Below, one piece after another: positions 2,520 through 45,748 of a stretch of 64,000 nucleotides of DNA (positions are counted from its first letter, which is position 1; each line of letters opens with the position of its first letter). Below the pieces are notes generated by a model, which did not search any database, was not told the origin of the DNA, and saw only the letters and a program-made list of their open reading frames with translations. This DNA is from Monocercomonoides exilis PA203 (taxonomy: Eukaryota; Protista; Preaxostyla): assembly GCA_001643675.2 (NCBI GenBank), contig LSRY02000012.1, positions 1,736,001-1,800,000 of the forward strand. Direction: 5' to 3'. Position numbers and translations under genes: made by a program.

Positions 2520-5500
2520 ATGGTGATTTATCTTTGTTTAATTTTTGCTGCATCATGTACTCCATTTATTACTGATGTCGCATTTGATCCCCAATTTCCA
2601 GAAATCACCGCTTTGTGCCAGCTTCGTCAGCATAATATTGGTCATTATTCTTTATCAATAACTATTTCTGATGAGACTAGTTGGAAGATATCTCGTGTAT
2701 TTTTGCGATTTAGTTCAGGTTTCATTTGAATTTTTATGTGACATTTTCATCGCAAACATTTTTCCAAAAGATATTGCGCTTAAAAACATTGTTTCATATG
2801 AGTCTTTTATTTCTTCCATTATTATAAAGAATGAAAATGAGGCTCAGTTTCCAAATTTCCCAGAAATTAATCCAAATGACGTAATAGTGACATTTGGGCC
2901 AATGCAACAGATAAATAATCATAAACGAACAGAACTTCACTTACTGTGCGATGAAGCACAGGATTTATTTGAAAATATACGATTGGTTTAAATATGCTTC
3001 AAGATTAGATTTTTATTATCTCATTTTTTTTTCTAAAATTCTGTTGTAATAGCGCTGCTTTATTGAAATTGTATCTAACAATGAAACAAGAATGCTTCAA
3101 GTGTATCTGAAACATGGAATTACAAAAGATGTGTGCAGTTTTTATAGTTGTTAATAATGAGGGGGAAATTGATAAATGAATACAATTAAAATTTTCTTTT
3201 TCAGTTTCACATTGAAGTCACTCCATTTGCATTTTGCTTGGCACGATCTGGACTGAAAGACACATGTTCTGTTATGGGATTTATGGATGCTGCACGAAAT
3301 TTTGCTTTTAATAATACATCGAAATTCAATGAAACAGAAATTCGTGGGTTTTTATCTTTGAATGGAATTCAATACAAAGAAGCAAATTTAACACGTGGAA
3401 GTTTTGAATGGGATGTAGATGATCCGGGTGAATATAACGTGCGTATCGTTCGCAACGAGCGTTCAATAAAAGAATTGAAAGTTAAGGTGACGCCAATGGA
3501 ACCATATTCGATTACTTTTGTTCACTTTTCTCTTCCTCAGTCGATGGATGTGTGTCTGAACGAAGAAAAGCTTAGACTCTTAGAAAAAAGTAAAGAAAAG
3601 TCAGAAATAAATGGCTCTTTTTTAACTGGAAGTGATTCTTCTCAGGTTTCTGAAAAGAGAGAAAGAGAAAGCACGATGCAAAACATGATTTTAGTCGAGT
3701 CATGTTTGAGTTGCGATGGAGGTTTGGCATTTGATTTTATATTATGACATGTTTGACACTTTTCTGTTTTTGCATTGACATTCATTTTTATCTATTAAAT
3801 TCCAATTTTGATTGAAAACTTTATCACTCGTGTACACTCTTTTTCTGAAAGGCGACGAATGCAACGCATTTTCTCTGCCAACACGAAGAGGCGAAGTGAC
3901 TGTTACTCTTCTCGACGCGCCAAAGGCGAAATCTCGGTATAAGCTGTTTCCCTTGTCTCAACAGCAGCAGAGCAAGTATTCTCAAACGAAGCAGCTGAAA
4001 GGCGGATTTGTTTTGTTCGATCGTCTTCCCCACTCAAATTTGGCTAATTTGACAGAATCTGCCATGTCATGCCCATCGCCTGCAAATCCAGTCAGATACA
4101 AAGTTGAGATTGCAGTGGGACAAAATGCAGGCTCGTTGCAGGAACAAAAAGTCCATCAACACTCAATCATTGTGTCTCTGACATCACCGTCGCAGATATC
4201 ACATGTCGTACTCGCCATGAAGGAAGACGAAGAAGGCGATGAAGATGAAAATGCTGAAGGATTGCCTGAATTCAATGGGGCTGCAGGTTTAAAAGCTGAT
4301 TCATCGAAACAAGAAATAGACAGTTATTCATCAGAAGATCACGACAAAGAAAGACATTGTCCATTATCAATGCAAGAAATAAGAGAACTTTCATTAAAAA
4401 TTGGAAGGTATCCGACAATTGAAGAGGCGAATGGGAAGGAAAACGGTCATTCAAGCAGAAAGACTCAGACGGGCAAGAATTCAACAGCAGAAGCTCATTC
4501 AAAAAGGAAAATTGTTGTTTTCAACGAAAACGAAGGAGAAAACGGAGCAAACGAAAGCATGTCGCGTATTCCGCACAAAAACAGCAGTTTTGCAGCTGAG
4601 CAGAACCAAATGCTTTCATCAATGGCTTCTGAAATGAATGTTCCCAAACGATGTTTGGCCAGTCTTTCTGGTGTGGCGTGTGCTGATCCGCAGCGGCGAG
4701 GGAAATGCAACAGAAACGAAATGAATAAAATGAATGAGAGAAAATTGGATGCAAACAACGGTGAGAAATTGCATTTGAATGGACAAAATCTGCCTGTGGA
4801 ACGAGCAACTTTGCATTTGAAGCGTCAGCAAACTTTGTCCGCTCTGAAGAACACTGCAAATACTTCTTCTGGAAATTCACCAGAATTTGCTGAATATTTC
4901 ATCACTCCGACTGACAACGGCACTTTTAACATCTCTTCACTGCGCCCTGGGCGATACCAGCTGTCTGTCTGTGGAAATGTTCACAGCACAACACTCAACT
5001 GCCTCTCACACGACAACAGATGCGATCACACTCCAATTGAGAAGTCACATTCTGATAGCATTGGCGAAAGAGGAATGGGCAAAAATACGATGGAAATGAT
5101 GCAAAACAAAATGAGACTGAGAAACGAAAGACCAAAAGTGGCACACCAAAATGAGAGAGAAATGGCTGAAGCAAATGAATTTGATGAAAGCGCATTTTTG
5201 GCAGATCCTCAAATGTCCTCGCATTTTTATGATTATTCCAATTCTGCCTCTCCTTTCCAGACAGCAAATGCTGACTCATCCTTTTTATCACAAAACGCTG
5301 TTTCTGAACATCATTTTTCAGCACAGAGCTGCCCTCTTTCATTTCCATACGACATTTATGTGTTTCCAGGGAGAGACAAAGAATTGTCTTTGCCTCTTTT
5401 CCACCCTTCATTGTCTGAACACACTTTTCACTCAGTCAGTGTTCTGGTTAAAACATGCGCTGATGTGAAGTCATTGGAGCAAAATGGGAAAATTAATTCA

Positions 5501-8500
5501 GATAAAATTTTCAGTCAAAGTCATCCAGCTCATCGATCCTGCATTCCTGTTCCGAACGTCTCTTTGCTGCTGATTCCGATGGAGGACAAGAGAGAAAGCG
5601 ATGGAATCCATTCGACCCCTTCTGTTGTCTCTGTTGGCTCTTCCTCCTTTTCTTCTTCAGTCTCGTTGAATTCTGCTGCTAAAAGTGCCAAACAAAAAGA
5701 AGAATCCAAAAATCTCGTCTCTTCTTTTGGACGCTTTACAACAGACAGCAAAGGAGTTGCTCAGATCACTTTGGAACACGGCAGAAAATATCATATTCGG
5801 CAGATGAAGAGCTTGGATGATAAACTCAATGAAAATGAAAATGAAAAGAAAATGACAAAAGAAGATGAACAAAAAGAGAAGCAACACAATCCAAAAACAG
5901 GAGAAAAACAAGAAATACAACAACAAATAGACGATAGCGTGTTGTCTTCTATCACTTTTGTTGCTGGCCAAACTGATTCAAACACAATTGCTTTGCCAAT
6001 TGTTGTGGGAAGTGTACCAAAAGAAGCAGAATTTGACAAAAAATCAGAAGAAAAAGAACAACAAATGAACAATGGCAACTCACAAAATGAAAAAGGAATT
6101 GAAAAAGCAGAAGAGAAACAGAATGAGCCATCAATTAAAGCGGAGAAACAAGAGATGACATATTCAGTTATCGATTTGGAGAACAATGTTCCATATCGCA
6201 CTTCCTCACAATCTTCACCTTCTTCTTCTTCTTCTCTTTTGTCGAATCCTTTGATGTATTCACGCCAGCTCCAATCTCAGCCTTCCTCTGCTTCAGCCAC
6301 ACCGCAAAAGCACCGCACTCCAAATCTTGTGCTCGAAATGTGCAGAAGCTGTGCAAGACGGACAAGTTGCGATATTCCCTTTCAGCCGGTGAGTGATCTG
6401 TTTGTTCTGCTTAGAGATTTTGAACAAGACAAAACAGAAGAAGATGATGAAAGAGGAGAAAGAAGAGGAAATAGTTCATCTAAAACATCTTCTCCACAAA
6501 CACCAGTCGCATCTGAATTGTCTTCACCATTGTCGACTCCAATCACAACTGTGCCAATTCAACCTGATCATCTGTCATCATCTCAATCATCATCATCCTC
6601 TTCTTCTTCTTCTTCTTCTCAGCCTCATCTTCAGCCTCAACCGCTGCTCTTCCGAACAGATAAAACAGGCATTGCTTCGTTTTCTGATGTTCCGCCTGGA
6701 AAATATCATGTCTTTTCGTACTCTTTGCAGCAAGAAAAAGACCCGTATTATCAGCTTCCTCACATTCAGCTGCTAAACAACAACGCGAAAGAAGGAATAT
6801 CCAAAGGCGATGAAGCCAAAAGAAATGCTTCTTCTGCTCATTTATCCGAAGAAGCAAAACAATCATCCCTTTCTACTGACAAGGATTCAAGCGATGCAAA
6901 TGCTGATAATTCTGAATCAAATGAGCTGCTAAATCCACTCATGTCAGTTCCATCTTCCTCCTCCTCTTCTTCTTCGTATTTGCGATCTGCTCAAAAGCAG
7001 AACTCGCCTCTTTCGTTCCTCTTTGCTCCGTTCAACAAGAAAGATGCCCTTACCACTGTGACTGTTTCGTCTGTCTTTCCGGCCTTTCAGCAAGTGCCTG
7101 TATTCGAAGAAGCAATCTGCCGAGGCACCGACACAGATGCCAAAGCAGAAGAAGCAAAGAAGACGATGATTGGGCTGAGCGGGACAGTCGACAGAGACAG
7201 TGAGTCAAACAGCAGAAGAAACACACTGCCATTCACAGTGATTGAAGGAGTGCTTGTGAATGATTGCGAGCAGTGGGTTGAAGATGAGCTGGAGGAAGAG
7301 GAGGAAGAGGAAAGTGAACACGAAGGCATTTTGTATGGGAAAACCGATCCAAACGAGCAAAATAGCGAGGCGAATGTGGTTGTTGATGAAAATGGCAACA
7401 AATACATTCCGATTCTTCAGTCTGACGGGTCGCTTCATTGGATCCCCAAGCCAGACGAATCGTCCAACAAGGCCTCGCTTTCTGCTCATTCGTCGCTGCA
7501 CAAGCAGAAGAGAATGTGCAAACAGCAACCGATTCCGTTCCACCCAGTTCTTGTGACGCTATTTCCGAATGGGAAGAGCGAGACGCTCATCACAAACAGC
7601 ACAGGAGGGTTTACATCTGGCCCCATTTTGGAAGAAGGAAGGTTTGTGATTTCAGCAAGTGTTCCGTGTCTTTTAGAGGAGAAAGCAGAAGAAGGGAAAA
7701 GGAAGGGAATTCAGCCGATGAAGAACTCGAAAATTGGAGCAAGCGATCGATATGAACAGAGCGAAGAAAGTTTCTTGTCTGAAGCTGAGAATGAGGATGA
7801 AGAAAGCGAAAGCGAAAATGAAAGATATGAAAAAGCGAAAAGAAGATTTGGTAAAAAAGATGAAAAAGATGGAAATTTTGTTAAAGGCGCAAAACGCTTG
7901 AGTTTTAAGAACATTATCAAAAAAATGAAGAATGCAAGCAAAACACCAAAGCAAACTGAGCAGGCAAACAAATCCGATAAGCCTAAGCAGTTGAAAGCGA
8001 AGAACATAACAGTGTTTACGACTGTTGTCATTTCTTCCGTTCCTTCGCAGAGTTTACAGTCGTCTCAGCTATCTTCTCTTTCGCCGTCTCTCACACTGAC
8101 ACACCCACCGCCTCTGAAGCTGGTTGTGAATTGTTCTCATTTCTGCTTTGGATCAATCACAGGAATTGCACAACTTGGCTGTTTTGAAGACATTCTGCTT
8201 TTGAATGGAACTGTTGTGCTGACAAAGGCCAGCGAATATGTTGAAACAGAAGGCAAAGAGAAAGAGAACGAAAGGGACAAACAGAACGGCAGCCAGCCGT
8301 CTGTCAATTTTGTGATGAAGACGCATTCTCCGCTGTCTGATCCTCATTCCACACAGCGCTCGCCGTCTGCATCAAGCAAAGTGTCTCTTTCAGCTTCGTA
8401 TGCGCCAGACTTCCACAGAGTGCTGAATGGCTCTTTCTTCATCCCCAAAGTGTATCCTGGTTCGTATCACGTTCGCTTCAGTGGCGTCTTGCCGAATGGA

Positions 8501-11500
8501 AAACAAGTGTCAAAAGGCACTTTTGTTGAAGTTGGGCAAAATGAGACGGGATTTGTGGAGTTTCTGTTTGGCAGGAAATCGATGGTGGCGAAGGAGAGAA
8601 GAATAAACAAGGAAAATGCGATGTTTTCAAAGAAGCAAAATGAGAAAGTTGGAGGAATCCACTCAAAATATGGACACAACATTGTTATTCACTCCTCAGA
8701 AGAAGACGAAAATGAGGAGACGAATGAAGAAGCTGAACTGTGTGAGGCTGTTGTTGATGGTGTTGTGTGTCTGGATTGCACTGGTACAGGCGTCTGCCAA
8801 GACAGTCGCACACACACACTGCTTCCTTCTGTGCAAGTGACAGCGACACCTGTCTTGTCCTCTTCATTTGGTGCTGCCTCATCCAATCTGCAGGAGCCAA
8901 GTGCAGATGCTGTGACAACAGAGACATCGCCACTCGGCGCATTCACGCTGACTCTTCCGCCTCGTCTGCATTCGCTGACTGTCGGGCCGATCTGCCGCGA
9001 AGGTTCCTATTTCACTCTGTCGCTGTCTTTGCGCCCAGCCTCTCATTTGTCGATTGAGGTGCCTGCACTTTGCTCAGACGAGTGCTTCTCTGCTGACTAT
9101 TCGTGGCAGGAAGACGCAGAGCTGATTGAGAGAGAGAAGGCACAAGAGAAAGCAGAGAGCGAAAAGGGCAGAGAAGACATCAACAAACTGTCATCTTCAG
9201 TGAAGAGCCCTGGAGACAGTGTGGAATATCGTGCTGTGCCTCCTCTACGCGATGGACTGGGTGCCAATTTGAGTGTTGTTGTGTGTCTCGACTGCGACGG
9301 CGACAGCATTTGTGACACGCCTTTCTCACCCCTCAAAGGAACAACCATCCAACTCACTTCTGCCTCAGATGCTGCGCCATACATCCAAAATGCTGATGCA
9401 GCCAATGCAAACATTCGCTATCCGCTGGCATCGCAGGCATCTGGCAAGCGTCCACCGGCTGTTCTCTTCTCAACAGCCACAAACAGCAGAGGAGTCGCTC
9501 TGTTTTCGCGCATTCCGCCTGGTCAATACAACATTCTGCTGGCATCTCCTTCGACTCCACCTGCATCATCAACAACATCAGCAACAGCAACATCGAGATA
9601 TGTTCAGTCATCTTCGTCATCAGCCACAAGACGTGTTGTTGAAAAGATGGTGTTTGCATCGACTGTGCTGCTTTCGAAGGGCTCTTCTCTTTCGATGGAG
9701 CTGGCTGTGGAAGACGCATCGGTGTGTGCCAACTCGAATGCAAAGCAGACACAAACAGAAACATCAATGAACAGTGCAAACGACGAAATGAGCGAGATTC
9801 TGCTGCAGCTCAACCCGAATGCTGTGAAAAAGGAGAGAGTGGTCGAGAAAGCACCTCCTCCTCCAATCAAACACCCCACAATTATTTCTATTAGCGATGA
9901 GAATCCTTCAACTACCACTACAACCACATCCACAACTTATTCTGTTTATCCCCCTTCTCTTTCTCCGTCATCATCATCATCCTCCTCTTCTTCTGATCCT
10001 GTCAATGCTAAGCAAAGTCTGATAACAGATTTGCCGCCTTCTCCAAAACAGCAGCGTTTGCACACAATCCGCGGAAAAGTGAGCGAACTCTGCACTTCGA
10101 AGCCTCTTCTGTCTAATCCTCATTCTTCTTCTGCTTCTTCTTCAGCTTTTGCATCATCAGCAGACGAGTTTCCTTCTCAAACAGCAATTCTTCCAAGGAC
10201 AATCACTTCGATCAAGCTGCTCAATCAATTGCTTACACCATCTCAGCCGTCTTCTCTTCAGATTCCATTTGCCCCTCCTTCGACATTTGCTGCTCCTTCT
10301 CCTTCTCCTTCCTCTTCTAATCCTTCTCAGCGAATTGTCACCGAAGAAACTGTCACTCGAACTGTTCGTCATTCAACAGCTCCTCCAACTTCTGCCTCCT
10401 CTTTTGCAAAACCTCCGCAATCGCCCTCAATTTCATCTGTTTCATCTGTTTCTCCGCCTCTTCCTCCTCCCTCAGCTGCATCACCATATACAACAAGCAT
10501 TCCTGCTGGAATAGAAAGAGATCTGGAGAGAGAAACAGGAAGAGAAATAGGAAGAGAAATAGGAAGAGAGATGGAACCGCGTTATGAGTGGATTGAGAGA
10601 GAAAGAATGGACAGCATCGAACGAGGCAGCAGATATCCAACAATTGACATCGACAGAATGATGCCCCCAACTCAAATTTCTGTCTCTCCACCGCCAACTT
10701 TTGCTCCGTCAAGTGCTTCCTCTTCTTCTCCGTCGAAATCGCCTCAGCCACAGCCAATACCTTCTTCTCAGTCTATTCCTTCGCCATCTTCCCAATCATT
10801 TGATCCATTTGATCCATCTTTGCAGATTCCGCAGTTGAGATATCCAATCTCTTCGTCTGGTGCATCGCCAGCTGTTCAGCCAAAAACAGCTTCTTCGACA
10901 GTGACTACAACAACAACCACAACCACAAAATCATCTTCGCCTGCTTCTTCGCAGGGAAGATATCCTTCTCTCTCTCCATCTCCCTCATCTCCCTCATCTT
11001 CATTGTCTTCTTCTTCTCCATCAATGTTGTCTGGCTCAACAACAGTGACACTCCTCTTCCCCGACAAACAGAAGACGCTGGTGACCACTCCCTCTTCTGA
11101 TGGGTCATATTCGTTCTCTGGTTTGGCAGCTGGCGAATATGTTGTCATTGCGCAGTCATCGGAATGCCCTGCAGACACACAGACAGCAGTGGTGGTTGTG
11201 TCTGACGATGGAGAGAAGGAAAGAGAAAGAGAAAGAGAAAGAAGAAGAGAAGAGAAAACAATGTTGAGGGGAATGATGGGAACAATCAATGAAGAGGAAA
11301 TAAATTCGTTTGAGAATCAGAATGATTTGGATAATGAAAAAGAGCAGAAAGAAAACGGATCATCACAAACGACAGAGGCAGCAGAAAAAGAGACAGATGC
11401 AACAACAGAACTTAACTTCCCTCTGCAAGTGATGATAGACACGATCGACTTTTATGGAACAGTCTTTTGGGATTACGGAATCTCACCATATTCCTCTTCC

Positions 11501-14500
11501 TCTTCTTCGTCTTCATCCTCCACAACAATAACACCATACATTTACCCACCGATTTTCCAGCCCATTCCCTTTGTGCTTGTTCGTGTGTACTACGAAGACA
11601 CTCTGATGGCAGAAGAATACACCACTTCGCAGGGCTCCTTCAACATCCGTGTTTCTGGGCGCTTCTGGAGCAACAGCATCATCCAGCCAAGATACTCGCA
11701 ATATGAAGAGCTGTTCAATCCATACATCAACCCACTCCCTGGTGTTGTCAGGCAAATACCCTTTTTGTTTGTTGTAGGGCCTCTTCCAGACAGACCTGTT
11801 ATGTGGAGCACTTATCCATACTCATCCTCGTCCTCTTCCACAGCCGGGTACAATCCATACAGCCAGGGCTACTACAACCCATCCAACACAAATCCTTTCT
11901 TTGAGCAGCGTGTTTGGGTCAGCGTTGGAGAGACCAATGTGCGTGTGGACATTCCCGTCGAGCAAGGCAGCAATCCCACTCCGTCTGGCTCATATTCACT
12001 TGGAGGAGAAGTCAACTTGGTGTGCGTGTTCTGCCCATACGCACACTACTGCACAGGCAACAGCAACAGCAACAGCGACATCTACCAGCCAAACATCATC
12101 CAGCCGTACAATCCGTATTCGTCTCCGTATGTTCCGCCAAACCCAGTTCCTAATCCATACACTGACCCTTATACATACCCTTACACAAATCCTTATACAA
12201 ATCCATATTCAAATCCTTATACCAGCCCATATACCAATCCATATACCAATCCTTACACTTATCCTTATAGCTCTCCATATTCATCGCCTTACTCGTCGTC
12301 TTACAGTCAGCCTGGCTCCTTTTACCAGCATTCATCGACAAGCTATTCATCCAGCCAATCAGAAGAGGCATTTGATCAGTCGTCCACCACTCGCGCCAAT
12401 TCATCGCCTTATGAAGGAATATACCCGTATGCTAATCCGTATGCACTCAACACATCGCCTCTTCTTGTTCCTGAATCTTCCACAACACTCGGTTCAAGTG
12501 CAAGTGACGGCTCTTTCTCATCTTCCCTTCCGTCGTCTTTGTCTTCAAAGTCTTCTGACGGCTCGTCCTCTTCAAATGCACAAAAAGCAGCAGATTCCAC
12601 TTATCAGCCTGCGTATTATAAGTCTTCATCTGCAACAACATCTGCATATTCATCGACTCGTCCAAGCACTCAGCAAAAGAGCGGACCTTCAAAAAGCGGA
12701 GGCGTTGGAATGTCGCCTCAGCAGATTGAGATGGAAAAGAAGGCAACGACGATGCCTTCCTCTCTGCTCAATCCTTCTTCGCCTGGTTCTTCTTCTTCCT
12801 CATCAACAGCATCGTCTCAAGGGAAGCAAGCCATTGGATATCAACCTTTGACACAGCAGCACTTGGCACAGCAACATCAACAAGCCAATCAAAAGCCTCT
12901 AATGAGCAATGATCCATCAACTGGTTCAGACTCTTCATCTTCTTCTTCGTCTTCATCTTCATTGAATAAGCCTCTTTCACACAACCCGTCTCAAACAAAC
13001 AATCCGATGTGTTCTTCATCCACCAGAACGGTTCCTCTGTCTGGCATCGAAATCTCTCTTATGAACAGCAACCTCCAAGTCCTCCAAACGACTTACACGT
13101 CTTATCCGCCTTGGTCTCCGTACTCTTCCTCATCTTCTAGTTCGATCCCCATTTATCCGCCTACTCTGAATCCATACTGTTCATCCCAAGGCAGCTCCAA
13201 TTATTTGCGTGCGGGCAGATTCTCCTTCACCAACTTGAGAGAAGGATGGTACTATCTGCGTCTGCGGCTGCCTCGCGGAGCACGACTGCTGAGCGATGTG
13301 AACAGCATTGTTCGTGCAGCTCAGTCTGGACAGACGAGAAACACAATGCTGAAAGGAGAGCTGAAGAAGGAAGGAGAAGCAGAAAAGGAAGTTATGAAGA
13401 GAGGAGAAGAGGATGTGAATGACTTGAATCAAAGATATGAGAGAAGGCAGAATGAAGCGATTCACCAGCAACAGCAGGACAAGAGAGCAGATGGACTGAC
13501 ATCTCTTCAATCACGTCCTTCATCCATTTCTCAAGATGCCTTTCGGATGAATGAAAGGGTGGATCCTCTGTTTGACCCCTATTTGGAGCGTCCGATGCAT
13601 CAGGCAATCGACTGCGAGCGATTGTTTGATTTGCGATACGGTGCATCTCCGTCTTCTCAGCCAGCACACACGCACAGAAGCCATTCTCCTCTATCAGCCG
13701 CCTCTTTCGTTGAAGAAGAGGAGACAGGAGGAAGTCAAGAAAAGCAACACTTGACTAAATCTTCTCCTCTCATTGCTGATGTGGTGGGAGATGGAAGTGA
13801 CTCTCACAACTCTTCTGGAAATGCTTTGGAATCAAACAGTATCAAATCCCTTCCTCTCACAAATCAAGCTGTGTCTCCGTCAATCTACCCTCCAATTACA
13901 CAAGTTCCGAACGGCAACACGTCTCCAACAATTCTCATTGGGCCGTTTTACGTTTCTTCAACATCAAGAAATCCTTATGCGATTATCGACATCTTTAGCA
14001 CACTTCTGTGTCGTGCTTATTTTCCTGACTTTCCCTGCGGCTCTGGCTCTTCATTTGGCTGCCCATTGTGCAGCAAACTTGCCGAAGGAGAAGAAGACTT
14101 CAGAATTGCACTTGAAGAAGGAAGGAAGCGCGAAGAGGGAGGAAGAAGTGAAATGAGAGGATTGAGTGTGGTTGTGGAAAGCGAAGATAGTGTTCATGGT
14201 GATGGAAGCAAAGAAGGAAGGAATGAAGCAATTGAACAGAAGCCATTGCACAAAGAAAATGAAGAAGAAGATGTGTATCAGAAGCAATATGAAGCAAGAT
14301 TGTTGCAGGCAATAAAAGAAATGAAGGAAAAAGAACGAGAAATGCAATTAGCAGAGCTTCAACAGCAAAGTCAACAAGCACAGCAAGATTCGAAGAACAC
14401 CCAAAATTCAAGAGCAGATCCTGATGAAGAATCGATTCCTCAGATGAAAATAACATCAGCATCTCCGTCTTCATACATCTTCCATTCTCAGCCATCGCAA

Positions 14501-16606
14501 CAATCGCAACAGGATGAATACAAACAAGAAATAGTTCAATACGAAAATGAAGTTCCACAAAGTTACGACAGCCAGCAGAGATATCCGAAAAAAGATTCAA
14601 CGCGAAATAAGGATGGCAAAGCGCCTTCTCTTCAGACATCTCAAATGGGCCTATCTCCTTATCCTTGTGCAGTTTGGGGCACATCACAGCTCACAAATGA
14701 GCCAGTCTGCCTTCGTTTTGCCTCAAAGCAATCAAAAGAGCAACAACAAACTTCTCAATCTCCAATCCGCTCTGAAGATTCTTTGTCAGCAGCTCGTTTT
14801 TATACTCCCCTGCAGAATCATCAAAAGTTTGTGTCACCTCAATTCAAAGAAGAAAACTTGGAAGAGGCTGAGATCAAAGAAGACAGATATGAGAAGCGTG
14901 ATTCTACAGGCATTATTTCAACCTCCAGTTCGCCATTTCTTTCAAAAGAAAGATTTGATAGAAGATTTGAAAAAGTGTCAAGTATACCAAAGGATCCATT
15001 TATGGGGAAAACTCAAAATGTTGGCTTGCATGGCGAGGTATCAGATGATTTCTCGGAGGAAGCATCTGCAAAAGAAATAAATGATTCAATGAATGCTGAC
15101 AGTATGTCTGCGTTCGTGCAAATAGACGAGAACAAATTGAATGAAAATGAAACTGTTTCAATTCAATTTCAACCTCAGCCAGGGCCTTTCCAGCCTCAGC
15201 CAGGTCCATCCCCTGGCCCCTTCCAGCCGCAGCCTGGACCTGGTCCATCACCTGGGCCATTCTCTCCACAACCTGGTCCCTCGCCTGGCCCGTTTTCTCC
15301 TCAGCCTGGTCCCTCGCCTGGTCCATCGCCTGGTCCATTCTCCCCACAACCTGGTCCATCTCCAGGTCCGTACTCTCCTCAACCTGGGCCTTCTCCTGGA
15401 CCATTCCAGCCCCAGCCAGGACCAGGACCAGGACCATCTCCAGGTCCGTTTTCTCCCCAGCCTGGGCCTTCGCCAGGACCATTCTCACCACAACCAGGTC
15501 CATCCCCTGGTCCCTTCCAGCCACAGCCTGGGCCTTTCTCACCTCAACCTGGTCCTTCTCCAGGCCCTTCACCTGGCCCGTTTACTCCTCAACCTGGTCC
15601 ATCGCCAGGTCCATTCTCTCCACAGCCTGGACCATCTCCTGGCCCTTTTTCACCACAGCCTGGCCCGTCTCCTGGGCCTTTCCAGCCTCAGCCAGGGCCT
15701 GGCCCGTCTCCTGGCCCATTTTCTCCCCAACCTTCTGATCCATTTTCTCCACAGCCATTTTCCCCAAATATGATTCCAGGTAATGAAATGTTGCCATTGT
15801 CTCTAACTGAAAAAGCGAAGCATTCAGATTACAATAAAGATGCAGACCAAAAAGAAGACGAGCCTAATGATGCAATAAAAAATGAAGAAATGACAGAGTT
15901 TGAAAGAGGAGATTCAACCCAACGCGATAGAGAAATTCTCATTGGAGAAAACATAACAATTGATGAAACAACAACTGTTGCTGAGTTATCTCAATCGAAT
16001 ACAGATGAAAATTTGAATGAAATATATGAACAAGATGCTCGATATCCTCAACCGCATCATCCGCATCATCCGCATCATCCGCCTCACGATGATGAACACA
16101 AACCCAGACCTCCACAACCTCATCATCCTGATAGGCCAAATCCCAAGCCACCTCATGGCCCTCACAATCCAAAACCATCTCCGCACGACCCAGATAGGCC
16201 AAAGCCTCCATCACATGAACCAGACAGGCCAAGACCCCCGCCATATGAGCCTGATCGACCAAGACCACCGCCACATAAGCCAGACGATCCGAGACCTCCT
16301 CCATACGAGCCAGACAGACCAAGGCCTCCGCCTCACAAGCCAGATAGGCCAAATCCATCTCCTCCAGATAATCCTCACAAGCCAAGGCCTCCTCCTCCGC
16401 ATCATCCTTCAAAACCAACAAACCCACACTATCCAATTAAACCAGTCTCACCTCCCCATCGTGAACCTCCACTGCGATATCCATCTCCACAAGCATCAAA
16501 TATCATAAAGCAAAGTCAGGATAATACGATCTATTCGAGATATCCCCAAACAAACAAAGAGAAAATTGATGAGACTCATGTTGAAGAAAGATACCCTTCA
16601 TTCTGA
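2520..16606 (+). CDS. Giant secreted modular protein (~4,587 aa) with repeated SdrD-B/Cna-B (prealbumin-like) domains and Tyr/Pro-rich repeats. Exons 2520-2718, 2771-2985, 3053-3130, 3205-3721, 3852-16606
   Basis: Four GT-AG introns join the ORFs in frame (13,764 nt CDS). Hydrophobic N-terminus MVIYLCLIFAASC. Recurrent T(D/N)xxGxxxFxxLxPGxYxV motifs and CL(D/S)CxGxxxC motifs; one of the latter is completed only across the exon 4/5 junction. Confidence 0.85.
12105..12305 (+). repeat. Coding Tyr-rich tetrapeptide repeat (YTNP/YSSP)n
   Basis: PYTDPYTYPYTNPYTNPYSNPYTSPYTNPYTNPYTYPYSSPYSSPYSSSY in the giant ORF. Confidence 0.9.
15168..15770 (+). repeat. Coding Pro/Gly-rich repeat, ~200 aa of (PGPSPGPF[S/Q]PQ)n
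   Basis: Directly visible in the translation. Synonymous codons differ between units. Confidence 0.95.
16040..16470 (+). repeat. Coding Pro/His/Arg-rich repeat (PHH)n then (PPxx[E/K]PDRPR)n
   Basis: PHHPHHPHHPPH...EPDRPRPPPYEPDRPRPPPHKPDDPRPPPYEPDRPRPPPHKPDRP near the C-terminus. Confidence 0.9.
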
Positions 16607-17164: not shown

Positions 17165-18196
17165 TCATTTTTTTTCTCCAAACTCCCAAAACGGGATCTT
17201 GAGTGTCAGACACTCCCACAGCATCATCCCAATTGAGAATGCCACTGACTCCTTGGTTGCTCCCATCTTCTTGTTGATAAACAATTCAGGTGCCTTCCAC
17301 CTTAAACACTCTTTTCTGTTGTCATCTTCATCCTCAAATGCTGATGAAGGAAGAGAGTCACTATCATCATCATCCTCCTCCTCACTGGCTGACGTAACAA
17401 CAGTTGATGAAGAGATGGATGACGAATCTGAATCATCAGATGAGAAGTCAGAGTGCATGACGATGCAGATGACCATGTGCTCTGAAAACAACACAATGTG
17501 TGGGCTCAGATTGGCTAAAGATTGAAGTGGATTTTCCATTTCATCAAATGAGTAGAGTGCAAGGTTAGCCACCCAAAACAGAATTTGAGCAGCTGTTTGT
17601 TCTCTCTCCTGGAGAGTTCCGATTGCCATCTCTTTCTTCTCGTTCCTTCCGTGAAGCAACATGAACAACGAATCCCTCAGATCCACTATCAGCTTCTCAT
17701 GAGGAGATGAGCAGGCCATTGCATCCACCAGATTCGACATCGACGAGGTAGTTGGGCACAAACTCTCCGATCGAACAAACGTGGATTCTGTGTCTGAAGT
17801 GTCTGTTGTTGAAGTGGATGAAATAGAAGGAGAAGGTGTTCTCTTTCTAATCTCTTCTTCTTCAACCTTTTCCAATGCCCATTCAGGAATCTTGTCTGAA
17901 TCTCTCCCCAATATGTATTCAGTGGAACCACTCTCACTCAACAAATGCTCCGATGACTCTGAATGTACCAAGCTTTTCGCATACACCCTCTTCTTTATCC
18001 TCTCTTCATTCTTCTTCTCAGCCTCCTTCCCCGCTCTTCTCCACTGATCTTCAGGAGACATCTCCATCGTCACCATCTCAAACGCCTTCGGATCTTTTCT
18101 GATATTATCGTTCACAATCTCTTGCAATTCATCATTTCTTTCCTTCACCTTTCTCCACCGAACTGCAAGAATAAAGGTTTCTTTAATCAAAATCAA
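17165..18196 (-). pseudogene. Truncated copy of a multicopy receptor-like (TKL-type) pseudokinase family
   Basis: Kinase C-lobe remnants LRWKAPEL (subdomain VIII) and ESVAFSIGMMLWECLTLKIPF (IX). No HRD or DFG. Begins abruptly at a juxtamembrane-like AVRWRK without ATG and ends right after IPF in an A-run. Confidence 0.7.
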
Positions 18197-36879: not shown

Positions 36880-39800
36880 TTAATTAAATCGATCACACCT
36901 CTTATTGAAAAGGAAACCACAACATCCTTGTGCCTCCTTTTCTTCTTCTTCGTCAAGTTCTGTGATGCTGTTCCTTTTGCTTTTTTGAATGTCTTTTGTC
37001 TCACTTTCATTTCTCTTGCTCTCTTCCTCTTCATATTCATCTTCCACATCTTCTCCTTCCTCCTCTTCCTCTTCCTCTTCTTCGTCTAAGCTCATGTTAT
37101 CACTACTAATTTCTTCATACGAACCATTTCTCAATCGACTATTCCCAAATTCAGATGGTTTACTTGTGTCTTCCAAATAATACTCCTCATCTTCTTCTTC
37201 CACTTCATCTTCTCTTTCCGATGGAGACAACGCATTCACTCCACCAAACTGTCCTCTTCTTTTGCCTTTCTCAGCACTGTCTCTGATGCTGTCTTCTTTT
37301 CCTCTCACAAGCATTCCATTCACAACTTCATTCCCAATCGCTTCTGTCTGCTCCACAACTTGCTTCCTCTTCTTTGCTTTCCTTCTTCGCGCGATGCTGC
37401 TGTTCTTCTGCTTGGCACTCCTGCCGCTGCTTCCGTCTTTCCTGAACTGCTCTGGAATGTCCAGCGGTTGACATGCCAGCGCATTCTGCTGAGGACGCAT
37501 CTGCGACAATGATGTTATGCTGCGTCTGTGCAGAGGATGTTGTGCACATTCTGGCAGCTTGTCGTGTGTGCCATGCTGGTGGAGCTCCTGGAAAGAGGTG
37601 GAAGACGCAGAGCGCTGCTCAGAAATCTCCGAAAGATCGTCCACCCACCCGTCAGATATCTGGATGTGCCGATAGGATGGCTTGATGTCCACATTTGTGT
37701 CTGCTCCAAACGCCTCGTCTGCTCTCCGCCTCGCTCTCTTCGAAAGAAACGATCTGTTGTTGCGCTTCGGCGGCTGCTGTTGCAACAAGTTTGGCTGCTC
37801 TTCGTCTTCGTCGTCGTCGAGGAAGAAGTTGTCGTCAATTGCATCCATCTCGTATTCTCCGCTAGCACCTGAACGAGAATTGCTTTCTGAGTCTTCGTTG
37901 GCTTCGACAGATAGCCCAGTTTTCAGTCTTGTCATTTCCTCGTCTTCTGCATGTCTCATCATCGCTTCTTCGTTTTCCTCGTCTTCCATCTCTTCTCTTC
38001 CGCTGATCTCTTCGTCTCCCACAGACGATGTGAATGACATGACCTGCGCATTCTCAAAGTCGTCATCTTCATCGTCGTCTTCTCCCATCGCAAGCGGATC
38101 ATCCAAACGCCCTGAATACTTTTCATTCCCCATCTCGTCTATCCTCCGCACAATGCTCAGATTCTCTCTCAGCTCTCGCTCTCTTTCGAGTTCTTCTTCT
38201 GCTTCCAGTTCTCTTCTGTCACTTTCACTCAGATTCATCCGTCTTCTCCGCTTCGCCTTTGCCTCGGCATCGTCTTCTGCTGAGCTGCTTTCAAACTCAC
38301 TCCACACAGTTCGTCTTTCTTCTTTCTCTTGCTCCTTCTCCAGCTCCTTCTCCTTCTGCAGTGCCAGCACTTTCCTCTTGTTCTCTTCGATAATCCTCTC
38401 CTTTTTTGTCATCCGCATTGATGTTGTTGCTGACAGTGTGGGAAACGGGCAGAGAGGTGGTTTTGTCTGGTGCTTCATCGGAGTGCCTGCGTTGCGTGCG
38501 CTTTCAGCGCTGATGGTCACCCAGCCAGCTGCCTTCTGCTGCAGCGGCGACGGCAGCTGTTGTGTGCCCTGGATGTGGTGCTGTTGTGTCCATGGCCGAC
38601 TCCTCATTCCATTCTGCGACGGAGGCGAAAGAGGCAGCAAGCTCTGCCACACCTTCTTCTTCTTCTCCTCGCGCCAGTCGTGCACTGAATATGTGTTTGC
38701 ATCATCTTCACCGTCTGACTCACCGTCGATGAGTGAGGCACCAGCAGCAGGTGGAAGAGAGGAGAGCGAAGAAGGACAGGACGGTGTGTGTGCAGTGGAA
38801 GTGTTTGACGGATGGGAAATGAGAACTGCATGAGGAGAGCCATTTGCAGAGGATGTGGGAGAATTGAAAGGGAAGTGTGTGGATGAGCTGTGTGTGGCTG
38901 TGGTTTGTGTGGCTGGATTCATCGTGACATTCGAAGGGACTGTTGAGGCATACATCGACTCAGAGGAAGACGATGTTGACTGCGATGGAACAGGCGAAAA
39001 ACAGTTCATTGCTGTTATTTGTGCAGCTGCAGGTGATGAAGATGAAGAGGAGGCAGCAGGAGAAGAAGAGGAAGAGGCCGAAGAGGATGATGATGAGCCT
39101 TGTAATGAATGTGTTGAATGCTTTGCCAAATACATAAAACTCGAATGTTTCTTTTCCAATTCTGGTGTTGAAGAAGATGGCTTGTGCGTGTTGTTCCGTG
39201 ACATAGCAACAGCATCTGTCATTTTGTCCATTCGCGACTTTTCTGGCGAAATGGAGTGGTTGTCGTTGATCGCTGGTGAGTCCATTTTGTTTTCCTGCTG
39301 CAAAAGAGCTGCTTGTATGTCATTCATCACACTCTCGTTCTTCATCTGCGATCGTCTCAGCATTTCCTTCCGCTTTCGTCGCAGCTTCCTCTTCAGCTTG
39401 CTCTCCTTCCTCAATCTTTCTTCTTCGGAGTCTGTCCCATCGTCTGAAATGTCGTTCAGATCCAGCTCGTCTTCCCCGCCTTGAAAGAGCACATTTCGAT
39501 GCTGCTGAAACTGGAAGAAGTGAGGCAGTGAAGACGAATGCGATCGATACAGCAGATGCGGATGTGCAATGTCATTCGGCTCGTCAAATACAAACGGGTC
39601 GCCTGAGTCGTGTGGTTGGTTCTCCTCCCCCGCCTTATCCTCGCTTCCCTGCTCGTTCCTGCCGCTCGACGACTCTTCCTCAGCTTCCACACTTTCTTCC
39701 TCGCTCTCGTCAGAGTAGAGTTCATACATTCTTCGTGACCGTCTCGAAAGTAGCTCTTCCTGTGGAGTCATTGGCGGGCGAAGGAGTGCAGGCTTTTTGC

Positions 39801-45712: not shown

Positions 45713-45748
<36 letters not shown>

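What the first reader, a model, noticed from the sequence alone, without database searches (positions are those of the whole stretch)
2520..16606. Giant secreted protist protein built from Cys-modified SdrD-B/Cna-B-like modules: candidate cyst-wall or surface-coat scaffold
Seen: a ~4,590-aa protein with a signal-like N-terminus, no C-terminal TM, and ~10-11 copies of a split module. First halves include CLSCDGGDEC, GVVCLDCTGTGVCQD (8768), VVVCLDCDGDSICD (9284), GTVFWDYG and GEVNLVCVFC. Second halves include TDNGTFNISSLRPGRYQL, TTDSKGVAQI, RTDKTGIASFSDVPPGKYHV, TNSTGGFT, NGSFFIPKVYPGSYHV, TNSRGVALFSRIPPGQYNI, SSDGSYSFSGLAAGEYVV and GRFSFTNLREGWYYL. Known: this matches the SdrD B-repeat pattern (GxVWxDxNGxGxxD...TTDxxGxYxFxxLxxGxYxV) of bacterial adhesin stalks. 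Inference: the Ca-binding DxNGxG loop has become a CxxCxGxxxC disulfide or metal loop, and the protein is an extracellular structural scaffold, possibly of horizontally acquired origin.
Basis: partly seen in the sequence, partly recalled or inferred. Interest (0 to 1): 0.8.

Follow-up and report, generated by a model that had tools for sequence, protein, structure and literature searches.

The report
Giant oxymonad protein of cysteine-braced SdrD-like modules
This is one expressed 4,587-residue gene of the mitochondrion-less gut flagellate Monocercomonoides exilis, built from about a dozen bacterial-adhesin-type beta-sandwich modules whose calcium loop carries three cysteines; it is probably a secreted structural protein, and neither that nor its function has been tested.

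Summary
Window 2520-16606 (+) is one spliced, transcribed gene of Monocercomonoides exilis with five exons, four GT..AG introns and 4,587 aa.

- **Topology:** its only hydrophobic segment is a signal-like N-terminus, and there is no TM.
- **Modules:** I count about 12-13 degenerate SdrD_B/CarboxypepD_reg-type modules, stretched apart by low-complexity sequence (59% of the protein). Five keep a C-x2-C-x5-C triad (0.01 expected by shuffling).
- **Triad position:** profile alignment to solved SdrD places the triad on the EF-hand-like Ca2+ site of the A-B loop. The Asp and Gly of that loop are kept.
- **Fold:** an AlphaFold model of one window module with no Pfam hit still gives a transthyretin/Cna-B-type sandwich.
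- **Family:** the gene belongs to a four-gene family in this genome. Two paralogues are compact with rigid Cys patterns, and one shares the phase-1 intron that splits a triad.
- **Relatives:** no triad-bearing relative turned up elsewhere. The nearest relatives are Cys-poor bacterial SdrD_B giants, then dictyostelid colossin.

Four points remain unshown: secretion, disulfide versus metal, a cyst-wall role (no support) and horizontal origin (plausible, unresolved). Gigantism by low complexity is common in this window. The scan's first readers had already noted two paralogues on other DNA (s1-471750, s1-465552). Verdict: a new variant of a known kind, of moderate interest.

The parts
2520..2718 (+). 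Exon 1. ATG at 2520 is the first ATG after an in-frame stop. It encodes the signal-like N-terminus MVIYLCLIFAASC.
   Evidence: joint 2718/2771; Kyte-Doolittle mean 1.85 over 19 aa; the only such segment in the protein.
2719..2770 (+). Intron 1 (52 nt, GT..AG).
   Evidence: RNA contig joint in run X1.
2771..2985 (+). Exon 2.
2986..3052 (+). Intron 2 (67 nt, GT..AG).
   Evidence: joints in runs X2 and X3.
3053..3130 (+). Exon 3, a 78-nt microexon (26 codons).
   Evidence: joints 2985/3053 and 3130/3205. The frame stays open.
3131..3204 (+). Intron 3 (74 nt, GT..AG).
   Evidence: joints in three runs.
3205..3721 (+). Exon 4. It holds a degenerate N-terminal module (hairpin GSFEWDVDDPGEYNV at nt 3397) and ends inside the first Cys triad (CLSCDG|).
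   Evidence: Single-sequence AF2 of this exon was poor (pLDDT 44), with strands only at aa 46-95.
3722..3851 (+). Intron 4 (130 nt, GT..AG, phase 1). It splits the first C-x2-C-x5-C triad. Paralogue C12 has an intron at the same position and phase.
   Evidence: joint in all four runs. C12 reads CIDCDE|TEHC with an intron at the same codon and phase.
3852..16606 (+). Exon 5 (12,755 nt including the stop). It holds modules M1-M12 and the low-complexity spacers.
   Evidence: contigs cover 3850 to about 11,240 with breaks only at repeats.
3703..4141 (+). Module M1, with triad CLSCDGGDEC interrupted by intron 4.
   Evidence: family module profile i-E 2.9e-4; collinear with module 0 of paralogue C2.
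4652..5011 (+). Module M2 (variant Cys pattern; hairpin TDNGTFNISSLRPGRYQL).
   Evidence: fn3_3 best stretch at aa 361-386 (family E 8.6e-9 for the whole protein). CarboxypepD_reg 0.0067; i-E 0.008.
5456..5821 (+). Module M3 (hairpin TTDSKGVAQI); weakly supported.
   Evidence: i-E 0.48 only. No Pfam hit. Placed by motif and order.
6323..6736 (+). Module M4. Triad CRSCARRTSC is separated from hairpin RTDKTGIASFSDVPPGKYHV by about 95 aa of low complexity.
   Evidence: SpaA best stretch at aa 948-967 (family E 5e-9 for the whole protein). (i-E 0.004); the triad stands alone.
7517..7711 (+). Module M5 (no triad; TNSTGGFT).
   Evidence: BLASTP to paralogue C12, E 2.8e-6. NOMO1-like_9th 0.049.
8132..8506 (+). 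Module M6 (variant C-x3-C-x11-C; hairpin NGSFFIPKVYPGSYHV); weakly supported.
   Evidence: motif; i-E 0.77. No Pfam hit.
8729..9106 (+). Module M7. This is a compact type-A module with triad CLDCTGTGVC that keeps all seven family-conserved cysteines.
   Evidence: 95.3 bits to the type-A profile (M7 is itself a row of that profile). AF2 pLDDT 70 with six strands. VIA Z 7.5-8.7; 10/10 CarboxypepD_reg clusters by shape.
9254..9616 (+). Module M8 (type A'; triad CLDCDGDSIC; hairpin TNSRGVALFSRIPPGQYNI).
   Evidence: SdrD_B 6.9e-5; i-E 2.8e-9; positional match to C12, C2 and C69.
10994..11251 (+). Module M9 (triad lost; SSDGSYSFSGLAAGEYVV). It gives the best single Pfam hits in the protein.
   Evidence: CarboxypepD_reg 8e-7, SdrD_B 1.8e-5, NOMO_3rd 8.4e-5; matches the C12 module that still has CIDCQRRGIC.
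11444..11731 (+). Module M10. GTVFWDYG stands where the paralogues have GTVCYDC, so the cysteines are lost.
   Evidence: TTR-52 0.0042; collinearity with the paralogues.
11984..12091 (+). Module M11, first half (triad CVFCPYAHYC). It corresponds to the most SdrD-like module of the paralogues.
   Evidence: C12 E 1.8e-4..
13019..13100 (+). Module M11, presumed second half (VPLSGIEISLMNSNLQVL), about 330 aa downstream of its triad.
   Evidence: Inference from collinearity with C2 and C69. No statistical support.
13178..13336 (+). Module M12 (RAGRFSFTNLREGWYYL). It corresponds to the last module of the paralogues.
   Evidence: SdrD_B 0.002..
13868..14086 (+). Conserved post-module segment with four cysteines.
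   Evidence: BLASTP to C12, E 1.2e-7.
12152..12283 (+). Tyr-rich (N/S)PYT tandem repeat inside the M11 insert.
15238..15723 (+). PGPSPGPF(S/Q)PQ tandem repeats (periods 33, 78 and 111 nt).
16220..16352 (+). PDRPRPPP(H/Y)(K/E) proline-rich repeats near the C-terminus. The protein ends ...ERYPSF with no hydrophobic tail.
   Evidence: nothing exon-like downstream of the stop.

Best explanation
The stretch is a single expressed gene of Monocercomonoides exilis with five exons and 4,587 aa.

**What it encodes.** The product has a signal-like N-terminus and no membrane anchor. It is a 'beads-on-a-string' protein. About a dozen SdrD_B/CarboxypepD_reg-type (transthyretin/Cna-B-like) beta-sandwich modules are separated, and in several cases internally split, by long Ser/Pro/Thr/Glu/Tyr-rich disordered spacers.

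**Family.** It is the most inflated member of a four-gene family. In that family's ancestral, compact form, the A-B loop of each module carries a cysteine triad (C-x2-C-x4/5/10-C) around the retained Asp and Gly. In SdrD this loop is the high-affinity EF-hand-like Ca2+ site that fixes the loop.

**Inferred mechanism.** The cysteines brace that loop covalently or through a bound metal. Module rigidity would then not depend on Ca2+. The protein enters the secretory pathway and serves as an extracellular or surface structural spacer, coat or matrix component.

**Shown.** The gene model, expression, module homology and fold class, the position of the triad on the SdrD Ca-loop, family size and collinearity, and the absence of a TM.

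**Inferred.** Secretion, the chemistry of the cysteines, and the structural role.
For: **Gene and transcript.**

**Organism.**: paralogue C2 is MONOS_5551 (KAH7828170.1) of M. exilis, on a contig of the same length as G000:C2.

**Module homology.**
- Pfam CarboxypepD_reg 1.4e-15 and SdrD_B 3.5e-11.
- Per-module Pfam hits.
- Family-profile hits along the protein.

**Fold.** AF2 pLDDT 70 with six strands. VIA Z 7.5-8.7 to the CPD transthyretin-like domain, teneurin, SdrD B, UafA and Cna-B pilins. All 10 listed Atlas shape neighbours are CarboxypepD_reg clusters.

**Triad on the Ca-loop.**
- The type-A profile has its best PDB hit in SdrD (2.2e-4). Module D-C-x-x-x-G-x-C lies gaplessly over SdrD D-T-N-K-N-G-I-Q.
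- The paralogue S module hits SdrD B at 9.2e-7.
- The B-I site is described as an EF-hand-like site in the A-B loop that fixes that loop (bioRxiv 10.64898/2026.05.01.722179).
- In the model the triad sits at the end of strand A and in the A-B loop.

**Family.** All CarboxypepD_reg, SdrD_B and type-A matches in the 82-Mb genome fall in four genes. Cys patterns are fixed in the compact paralogues, and all seven type-A cysteines are kept in window M7. Paralogue C12 shares the phase-1 intron inside a triad.

**Secretory hints.** The only hydrophobic segment is aa 1-19. Paralogue C69 has 54 N-x-S/T sequons against 15.1 +/- 3.6 in shuffles.
Against: - No signal-peptide predictor was run.
- The annotated paralogue MONOS_5551 has no signal peptide at its annotated start, although that model may be 5'-incomplete.
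- The window protein itself is not enriched in sequons: 34 observed against 44 expected.
- Seven of about 12 modules have lost or altered the triad, and 59% of the protein is low-entropy. The modules may therefore be under relaxed constraint in this copy.
- Low-complexity gigantism also affects a neighbouring kinase ORF, which is 81% low-entropy. Size alone therefore says little about function.
- No anchor, ligand-binding head, localisation or proteomic evidence exists.
- The structure tool returns no coordinates, so Cys-Cys distances could not be read.
Confidence: 0.6

Rival explanations
1. The cysteine triad, with the conserved Asp, is a metal site (for example Zn2+ or Fe) rather than a disulfide brace. 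The module would have exchanged a Ca2+ EF-hand-like site for a thiolate metal site.
For: - The triad is a self-contained unit of three cysteines. Type-A' modules of the compact paralogues contain only these three.
- In the window protein, triads M4 and M11 have no other cysteine within more than 250 residues, so they cannot be fully disulfide-bonded within the chain.
- Asp is invariant in type-A and type-Y modules.
- The site overlies a metal site of SdrD.
Against: - Thiolate metal sites are unusual in secreted proteins (general knowledge).
- Total cysteines in the compact module arrays are even: 26 in C69 and 68 in C2. This is compatible with all-disulfide pairing that includes inter-module bonds.
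- Type-B modules lack the Asp (CYSC, CITC).
- A third, unpaired cysteine could instead make intermolecular cross-links.
Confidence: 0.3
2. The protein is a cyst-wall-specific scaffold.
For: It carries Tyr-rich (NPYT)n and Pro-rich repeats that could be cross-linked, Cys-rich modules, and no anchor.
Against: - Spliced RNA is present in all four metatranscriptome runs. Their coded study is probably the M. exilis culture time course, which sampled exponential, stationary and decline phases (PMC12308965). This identification is unverified.
- The genome paper does not contain the words cyst or cysts (PMC6759080).
- There is no similarity to known protist cyst-wall protein families in Pfam.
Confidence: 0.1
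3. The family is an ER-lumenal NOMO-like spacer, the oxymonad counterpart of the BOS-complex subunit NOMO, and not a secreted protein.
For: - NOMO is a string of about 12 such sandwiches.
- NOMO_3rd scores 38.8 bits, above its cut-off of 27.
- NOMO2 is the second-best PDB sequence hit of a paralogue module, at 2.7e-4.
- Every CarboxypepD_reg match reported in the genome falls in this four-gene family. The scan scores only the best candidates and exons separately, so its counts are lower bounds.
Against: - There is no C-terminal TM.
- The NOMO-specific Pfam hits lie under stronger CarboxypepD_reg/SdrD_B hits and are not collinear with NOMO domain order. The 3rd-domain model hits M9, the 9th-domain model hits M5 and the 2nd-domain model hits M8.
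- SdrD scores better than NOMO.
- NOMO has no Cys triads (from my knowledge; not tested here).
Confidence: 0.07
4. This copy is a drifting, low-complexity-swamped paralogue whose beta-sandwich modules no longer matter. Whatever function it has resides in the disordered, mucin-like or proline-rich parts, or it has none beyond being tolerated.
For: - 59% of the protein is low-entropy.
- Triads are lost or altered in seven modules and cysteines are lost in M9 and M10.
- Several modules are undetectable by Pfam.
- The same kind of inflation occurs in an unrelated kinase ORF nearby.
- Ten RYP motifs are unique to this copy.
Against: - A 4,264-codon open frame is maintained, and the gene is spliced and transcribed.
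- M7 keeps all seven conserved cysteines and folds in silico.
- Module order is fully collinear with the paralogues.
Confidence: 0.15

Closest known systems
B repeats of Staphylococcus aureus SdrD (Pfam SdrD_B, PF17210; PDB 4jdz, 10ps) and UafA
   Same: - Tandem Cna-B-type sandwiches of about 110 aa.
- The same signature: G-x-V-(W)-x-D-x-N-x-N-G...G-x-x-G-V-x-V-x-L...T-T-D-x-x-G-x-Y-x-F-x-x-L-x-x-G-x-Y.
- SdrD is the best solved-structure sequence hit (9.2e-7 and 2.2e-4).
- Both are combined with long low-complexity spacer regions, the SD repeats in SdrD.
   Different: - The host is a eukaryote and the gene has introns.
- The window protein has no canonical D-x-N-x-N-G loop. Instead, three cysteines bracket the loop.
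- There is no N2N3 ligand-binding head, no LPXTG anchor and no cell wall.
- Spacers are inserted inside and between modules rather than in one block.
CarboxypepD_reg (PF13620) transthyretin-like domains, including eukaryotic NOMO, teneurin and carboxypeptidase D
   Same: - This is the highest Pfam score of the window protein (57.8 bits).
- It provides the best structural matches (Z 8.5 to duck CPD domain II, 7.9 to teneurin).
- All listed Atlas shape neighbours belong to it.
   Different: - Those domains are single accessory domains, or in NOMO a TM-anchored ER protein.
- None is known to me to carry a C-x2-C-x5-C triad on the A-B loop.
- The protein is not collinear with NOMO and has no TM.
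Colossin A of dictyostelids (Cavenderia fasciculata XP_004357925.1, 7,796 aa) and an Ichthyophonus hoferi SdrD_B+EGF protein
   Same: Both are giant eukaryotic proteins made of many SdrD_B/Cna-B-type repeats. Both were recovered by the family profile (P0016 1.5e-95, P0130).
   Different: - They have no Cys triad in the loops.
- M. exilis modules score higher to bacterial modules than to these (ranks 29 to 167 of 124-178 hits, beyond 100 for the most SdrD-like module).
- They do not group with M. exilis modules in the module tree.
- To my knowledge their function is also unknown.
Paralogues in the same genome: MONOS_5551 (G000:C2), G000:C69 and G000:C12
   Same: - Same module order and same triad.
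- C12 shares the triad-splitting phase-1 intron and the low-complexity inflation.
   Different: - C2 and C69 are compact, with modules about 105-115 aa apart, 41% identical to each other, and fixed Cys patterns of 7/5/3/6/5 per module type.
- C69 is heavily enriched in N-glycosylation sequons.
- The window copy has lost many cysteines and gained RYP motifs and Tyr- and Pro-rich repeats.

Membership tests
SdrD_B (PF17210) | Match to the family HMM above the curated whole-protein cut-off (29.7 bits). | tested here: met
   43.7 bits, E 3.5e-11, summed over two stretches. Single modules are each below the cut-off (25.3, 23.4 and 18.7 bits). Paralogues score 87.7, 68.1 and 58 bits.
SdrD_B (PF17210) | Cna-B-type/prealbumin-like beta-sandwich fold. 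| tested here: met
   model pLDDT 70 with six strands. Z 7.9, 7.8 and 7.5 to SdrD entries 10ps, 8vdk and 4jdz, within a field made up only of this fold class. These Z values are middling, so the match establishes fold class and not the specific family.
SdrD_B (PF17210) | EF-hand-like Ca2+ loop D-x-N-x-N-G-x-x-D after strand A (site B-I). | tested here: not met
   no canonical loop in the window protein, only D-C-T-G-T-G in M7; the loop's length, Asp and Gly are kept, but the liganding Asn positions vary and cysteines are added. Ca2+ binding itself cannot be tested here.
MSCRAMM Sdr adhesins | N2N3 ligand-binding region, SD-repeat region and LPXTG wall anchor. | tested here: not met
   no such Pfam domains. 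The C-terminus ...ERYPSF has no sorting signal. The organism is a eukaryote.
CarboxypepD_reg (PF13620) | HMM match above the cut-off (32.3 bits) and a transthyretin-like fold. | tested here: met
   57.8 bits, E 1.4e-15, three stretches. Z 8.5 to duck CPD domain II; 10/10 nearest Atlas shapes carry PF13620.
NOMO / BOS complex subunit | C-terminal transmembrane helix after about 12 sandwiches. | tested here: not met
   no hydrophobic segment except aa 1-19; no exon-like continuation after the stop.
NOMO / BOS complex subunit | Position-specific NOMO domain models matching in NOMO order. | tested here: not met
   NOMO_3rd hits M9, NOMO1-like_9th hits M5 and NOMO1-like_2nd hits M8. The order is wrong, and all lie under stronger generic hits.
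Cna_B isopeptide domains (pilins) | Match to Cna_B (PF05738) and the Lys-Asn/Asp isopeptide triad. | tested here: inconclusive
   PF05738 was not among the hits; only the clan relative SpaA appeared (36.6 bits). Isopeptide residues were not examined. Structural similarity to pilin Cna-B domains is at Z 6.5-7.2.
M. exilis Cys-triad SdrD_B-like family (C2/C69/C12/window) | C-x2-C-x4/5/10-C triad at the end of strand A and in the A-B loop, plus collinear module order. | tested here: met
   window M7 scores 95.3 bits to the type-A profile, of which M7 is itself a row; shared intron.

The most novel reading that the evidence does not exclude
An oxymonad lineage captured a bacterial adhesin-stalk module (SdrD_B) and re-engineered its high-affinity Ca2+ site into a three-cysteine site. 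That site would be either a thiolate metal centre or a redox-switchable brace with one free thiol per module for intermolecular cross-linking. The four-gene family would then build a redox- or metal-hardened surface coat or matrix suited to an anaerobic gut. The window gene would be its mucin-like, Tyr/Pro cross-linkable giant member.
Probability: 0.2. Interest if true: 0.65.

Novelty: new variant of a known kind. Interest (0 to 1): 0.45.

Why it matters
SdrD_B/Cna-B stalk modules are a hallmark of bacterial surface adhesins, and their rigidity depends on Ca2+. Here a eukaryote without mitochondria carries a small private family in which the same loop is bracketed by conserved cysteines.

This is a natural experiment in replacing a Ca2+ clamp by covalent or thiolate chemistry. 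It is also a candidate case of a bacterial surface module domesticated into intron-bearing eukaryotic genes.

The proteins are deposited only as hypothetical proteins. They are among the few leads to the unknown surface or extracellular biology of oxymonads.

The practical value is modest until localisation and cysteine chemistry are known. The window copy is the most degenerate member. The compact paralogues MONOS_5551 and the C69 gene are therefore the better experimental entry points.

Tried and rejected
1. **Word-index searches of 5.8 billion proteins**. Queries were the window modules, paralogue C69 and MONOS_5551. They returned nothing, or only Cys-poor bacterial SdrD_B proteins covering 6-41% of the query.
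2. **Exhaustive profile search**. It gave 5,636 hits, but the 150 shown are dominated by many-repeat bacterial proteins. Weaker triad-bearing relatives, including the window protein itself, could be hidden below rank 150. None of the 178 non-M. exilis proteins fetched has the triad.
3. **Metagenome pattern scan**. 247 pattern matches were found, and none was confirmed.
4. **Supplement searches** for MONOS_5551, SdrD and the Pfam ids in the two genome papers. Nothing is held or found.
5. **Single-sequence AF2 of exon 4**. The model had pLDDT 44 and was not searched further.
6. **N-terminal 345 aa against the paralogue loci by tblastn**. No significant similarity, so a family-wide signal peptide could not be checked.
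7. **Cysteine parity** as a test of disulfide versus metal. It was uninformative.
8. **Module phylogeny** (77 rows, 97 columns). It was unresolved apart from positional orthologue pairs.
9. **The RNA 'joint' 4246 to 7293** (GA..GG, 20-nt side). I rejected it as a low-complexity assembly artefact and not an intron.
10. **NOMO orthology.** Rejected; see the membership test.

The spliced protein was assembled only inside scripts, for frame, length and motif statistics and for a local profile scan. No database or fold search was made with the joined sequence. All such searches went exon by exon, by reference.

Full report
**1. What is there**

The window holds an uninterrupted 4,264-codon frame at 3812-16606 (+). 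It is preceded by short coding pieces in other frames.

Contigs from four metatranscriptome runs of one study lie on 2607-8200 without a single base difference. They show four GT..AG joints. These define five exons:
- 2520-2718
- 2771-2985
- 3053-3130 (a 78-nt microexon)
- 3205-3721
- 3852-16606

Joined inside a script only, the exons give 13,764 nt, or 4,587 aa, with one terminal stop. Three contigs of 4.2-4.7 kb run past 8200 by about 3.0 kb, so RNA continuity reaches about 11,240.

A further 'joint' from 4246 to 7293 (GA..GG, 20-nt side) is a repeat artefact.

The runs are coded. They probably derive from the M. exilis culture time course of PMC12308965, but I could not verify this.

**2. 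Organism and context**

The assembly has 82.3 Mb in 101 contigs. A paralogue on contig C2 is identical to MONOS_5551/KAH7828170.1 of Monocercomonoides exilis, on a contig of the same length.

The protein is 14-15% Ser and 10% Pro, and 59% of it lies in low-entropy windows. A neighbouring 4,334-codon kinase ORF (36880-49884, minus strand) is 81% low-entropy. Size through low-complexity growth is therefore not special to this gene.

**3. The modules are real**

Pfam on the big exon gives the following, all above their curated cut-offs:

| Family | E-value | Bits |
|---|---|---|
| CarboxypepD_reg | 1.4e-15 | 57.8 |
| SdrD_B | 3.5e-11 | 43.7 |
| NOMO_3rd | 1.1e-9 | 38.8 |
| SpaA | 5e-9 | 36.6 |
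| fn3_3 | 8.6e-9 | 35.5 |
| EMC7 beta-sandwich | 1.3e-6 | 29 |

Cut into pieces, seven of ten module segments give clan-consistent hits. The best are M9 (8e-7) and M8 (SdrD_B 6.9e-5). M3, M6 and M7 give none.

Against 1,000 shuffles, the hairpin motif occurs 8 times against 0.85 expected. C-x2-C-x5-C occurs 5 times against 0.01 expected.

Module M7 (8729-9106) has no Pfam hit. Modelled with an alignment of seven paralogue modules, it gave pLDDT 70 and six strands. Its structural neighbours are exclusively transthyretin-like and Cna-B-type sandwiches:
- VIA Z 8.5 to duck carboxypeptidase D domain II
- Z 7.9 to teneurin and to SdrD entry 10ps
- Z 7.5 to SdrD entry 4jdz and to UafA
- Z 7.0-7.2 to Cna-B pilins

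All ten listed Atlas shape neighbours are CarboxypepD_reg clusters, with TM 0.55-0.62. These scores establish fold class. They do not establish a particular family.

**4. A four-gene family explains the odd 'split module'**

Every genomic match to CarboxypepD_reg, SdrD_B or the type-A module profile falls in four genes: the window gene and genes on contigs C2, C69 and C12.

C2 and C69 are compact. Their modules lie about 105-115 aa apart and the two are 41% identical over 846 aa. They score much higher than the window protein, at 100 and 75 bits for CarboxypepD_reg and 87.7 and 68.1 bits for SdrD_B. They show five module types with fixed cysteine patterns (A 7, B 5, A' 3, Y 6, S 5). Each begins with the triad C-x2-C-x4/5/10-C.

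The window protein and C12 are collinear with them but inflated by low complexity. In the window copy:
- Five modules keep C-x2-C-x5-C (M1, M4, M7, M8, M11).
- Two have variant spacings (M2, M6).
- The rest have lost the triad. For example, GTVFWDYG stands where the paralogues have GTVCYDC.
- M7 keeps all seven type-A cysteines.

C12 has CIDCDE|TEHC with a phase-1 intron at exactly the codon where the window gene has CLSCDG|GDEC. That intron therefore predates the duplication.

I count 12-13 modules (M0-M12). About six have individual statistical support. The others rest on motif and order.

**5. Where the cysteines sit**

A profile of type-A modules, including window M7, finds SdrD as its best solved-structure hit (2.2e-4). 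It aligns module D-C-x-x-x-G-x-C without gaps over SdrD D-T-N-K-N-G-I-Q, followed by G-I-S-G-V-T-V.

The most SdrD-like paralogue module (C-V-F-C-D-V-H-H-N-G-T-D-E-M-C) hits SdrD B at 9.2e-7 and NOMO2 at 2.7e-4.

[quoted passage not shown] In the M7 model, the first Cys ends strand A and the other two lie in the A-B loop.

The loop is braced rather than replaced, because its length, Asp and Gly persist. In type-A modules the cysteines take the Trp position (-2) and positions +1 and +7 relative to the Asp. The window protein has no canonical D-x-N-x-N-G.

Whether the cysteines form disulfides or bind a metal is open. Three-cysteine units that stand alone speak for a metal site or for an unpaired, cross-linking thiol; these are the A' modules, and window M4 and M11, which have no other Cys within more than 250 aa. 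Even cysteine totals in the compact arrays (26 and 68) are compatible with all-disulfide pairing across modules. The structure tool returns no coordinates.

**6. Location and role**

The only hydrophobic segment is aa 1-19 (MVIYLCLIFAASC...), with small residues before a plausible cleavage site. There is no TM or hydrophobic tail, and nothing exon-like follows the stop.

Paralogue C69 carries 54 N-x-S/T sequons against 15.1 +/- 3.6 expected. This is strong indirect evidence that the family sees the secretory pathway. The window protein is not enriched, at 34 against 44.

The spacers include a Tyr-rich (N/S)PYT array, PGPSPGPF repeats and PDRPRPPP repeats.

I therefore favour a secreted or surface structural 'beads-on-a-string' protein. 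Nothing supports a specifically cyst-wall role. The RNA comes from metatranscriptomes that probably derive from growing culture, and the genome paper does not mention cysts. NOMO orthology fails on the missing TM and on domain order.

**7. Relatives and origin**

Word-index searches found no triad-bearing relative.

The exhaustive profile search gave 5,636 hits. The top hit is MONOS_5551 itself. The others are Cys-poor giants with canonical W-x-D-x-N-x-N-G loops. Those that carry a name are:
- **Bacterial:** Muricoccus, Desulfobacteraceae, and a 'fimbrial isopeptide formation D2' protein.
- **Eukaryotic:** colossin A of Cavenderia and an Ichthyophonus protein.

A metagenome pattern scan was blank.

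M. exilis modules are up to 45-51% identical over about 60 aa to modules of bacterial-type SdrD_B proteins (few of which carry a taxonomic name). They rank colossin and Ichthyophonus well below the best bacterial-type hits (ranks 29 to 167 of 124-178; beyond 100 for the S module).

In a 97-column module tree, positional orthologues pair at 95-99 SH-aLRT. The S module sits among bacterial modules, but the backbone is unresolved.

Horizontal acquisition followed by intron gain, duplication and 'cysteinisation' is plausible; I put it at roughly even odds. It is not demonstrated. Only 150 of the 5,636 hits could be inspected, and other Preaxostyla may be missing from the databases.

**8. Verdict**

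This is a new variant of a known kind: a eukaryotic, lineage-restricted, cysteine-braced SdrD_B/CarboxypepD_reg module family. The window gene is its most degenerate, low-complexity-inflated member.

First-stage notes s1-471750 and s1-465552 had flagged SdrD-B-like tandem proteins with Cys-substituted loops on other pieces of this genome, presumably two of the compact paralogues.

All database and fold searches were made exon by exon, by reference. The joined protein was used only inside scripts.

Noticed in passing
window 36880-49884 (-): A second giant open frame of 4,334 codons. It carries a protein kinase domain (Pkinase 9.1e-15), is 21% Ser and is 81% low-entropy. It shows that low-complexity gigantism also affects an unrelated gene in this window.
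   Followed up: partly
window: full-protein aa 522, 2192, 2597, 2666, 2706, 3913, 4400, 4545, 4566, 4583: Ten R-Y-P tripeptides against 0.62 expected (none of 1,000 shuffles reached 10). One lies four residues from the C-terminus. None occurs in the three paralogues. Its meaning is unknown.
   Followed up: partly
window 3722-3851 and L014 (G000:C12), minus strand, near plus coordinate 2920: A phase-1 intron splits a Cys triad at the same codon in the window gene (CLSCDG|GDEC) and in paralogue C12 (CIDCDE|TEHC). The intron is older than the duplication.
   Followed up: yes
L011:584-4030 (G000:C69): Paralogue C69 has 54 N-x-S/T sequons in 1,149 aa against 15.1 +/- 3.6 in shuffles. This is far more than the other three family members and suggests a heavily N-glycosylated protein.
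   Followed up: partly
window 12152-12283; 15238-15723; 16220-16352: Three coding tandem-repeat arrays: (N/S)PYT Tyr-rich repeats, PGPSPGPF(S/Q)PQ repeats and PDRPRPPP(H/Y)(K/E) repeats. They resemble cross-linkable or extensin-like sequence. No function was tested.
   Followed up: no
window 4246-7293: RNA contigs in all four runs show a 3,046-nt 'skip' with GA..GG ends and only 20 nt on one side, between GAA-rich stretches. I read it as an assembly artefact of low-complexity sequence and not as an intron.
   Followed up: partly
window 17165-18196 (-): A 343-codon frame with weak matches to the C-terminal part of protein kinase domains (E about 0.005). It is probably one exon of a kinase gene convergent with the giant gene.
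   Followed up: no
P0130 (Ichthyophonus hoferi, EukProt) and P0016 (Cavenderia colossin A): Other eukaryotes also have giant SdrD_B-repeat proteins. The Ichthyophonus protein combines them with about 20 EGF-like C-x-C motifs. The patchy eukaryotic distribution of this bacterial-type module may deserve its own survey.
   Followed up: partly
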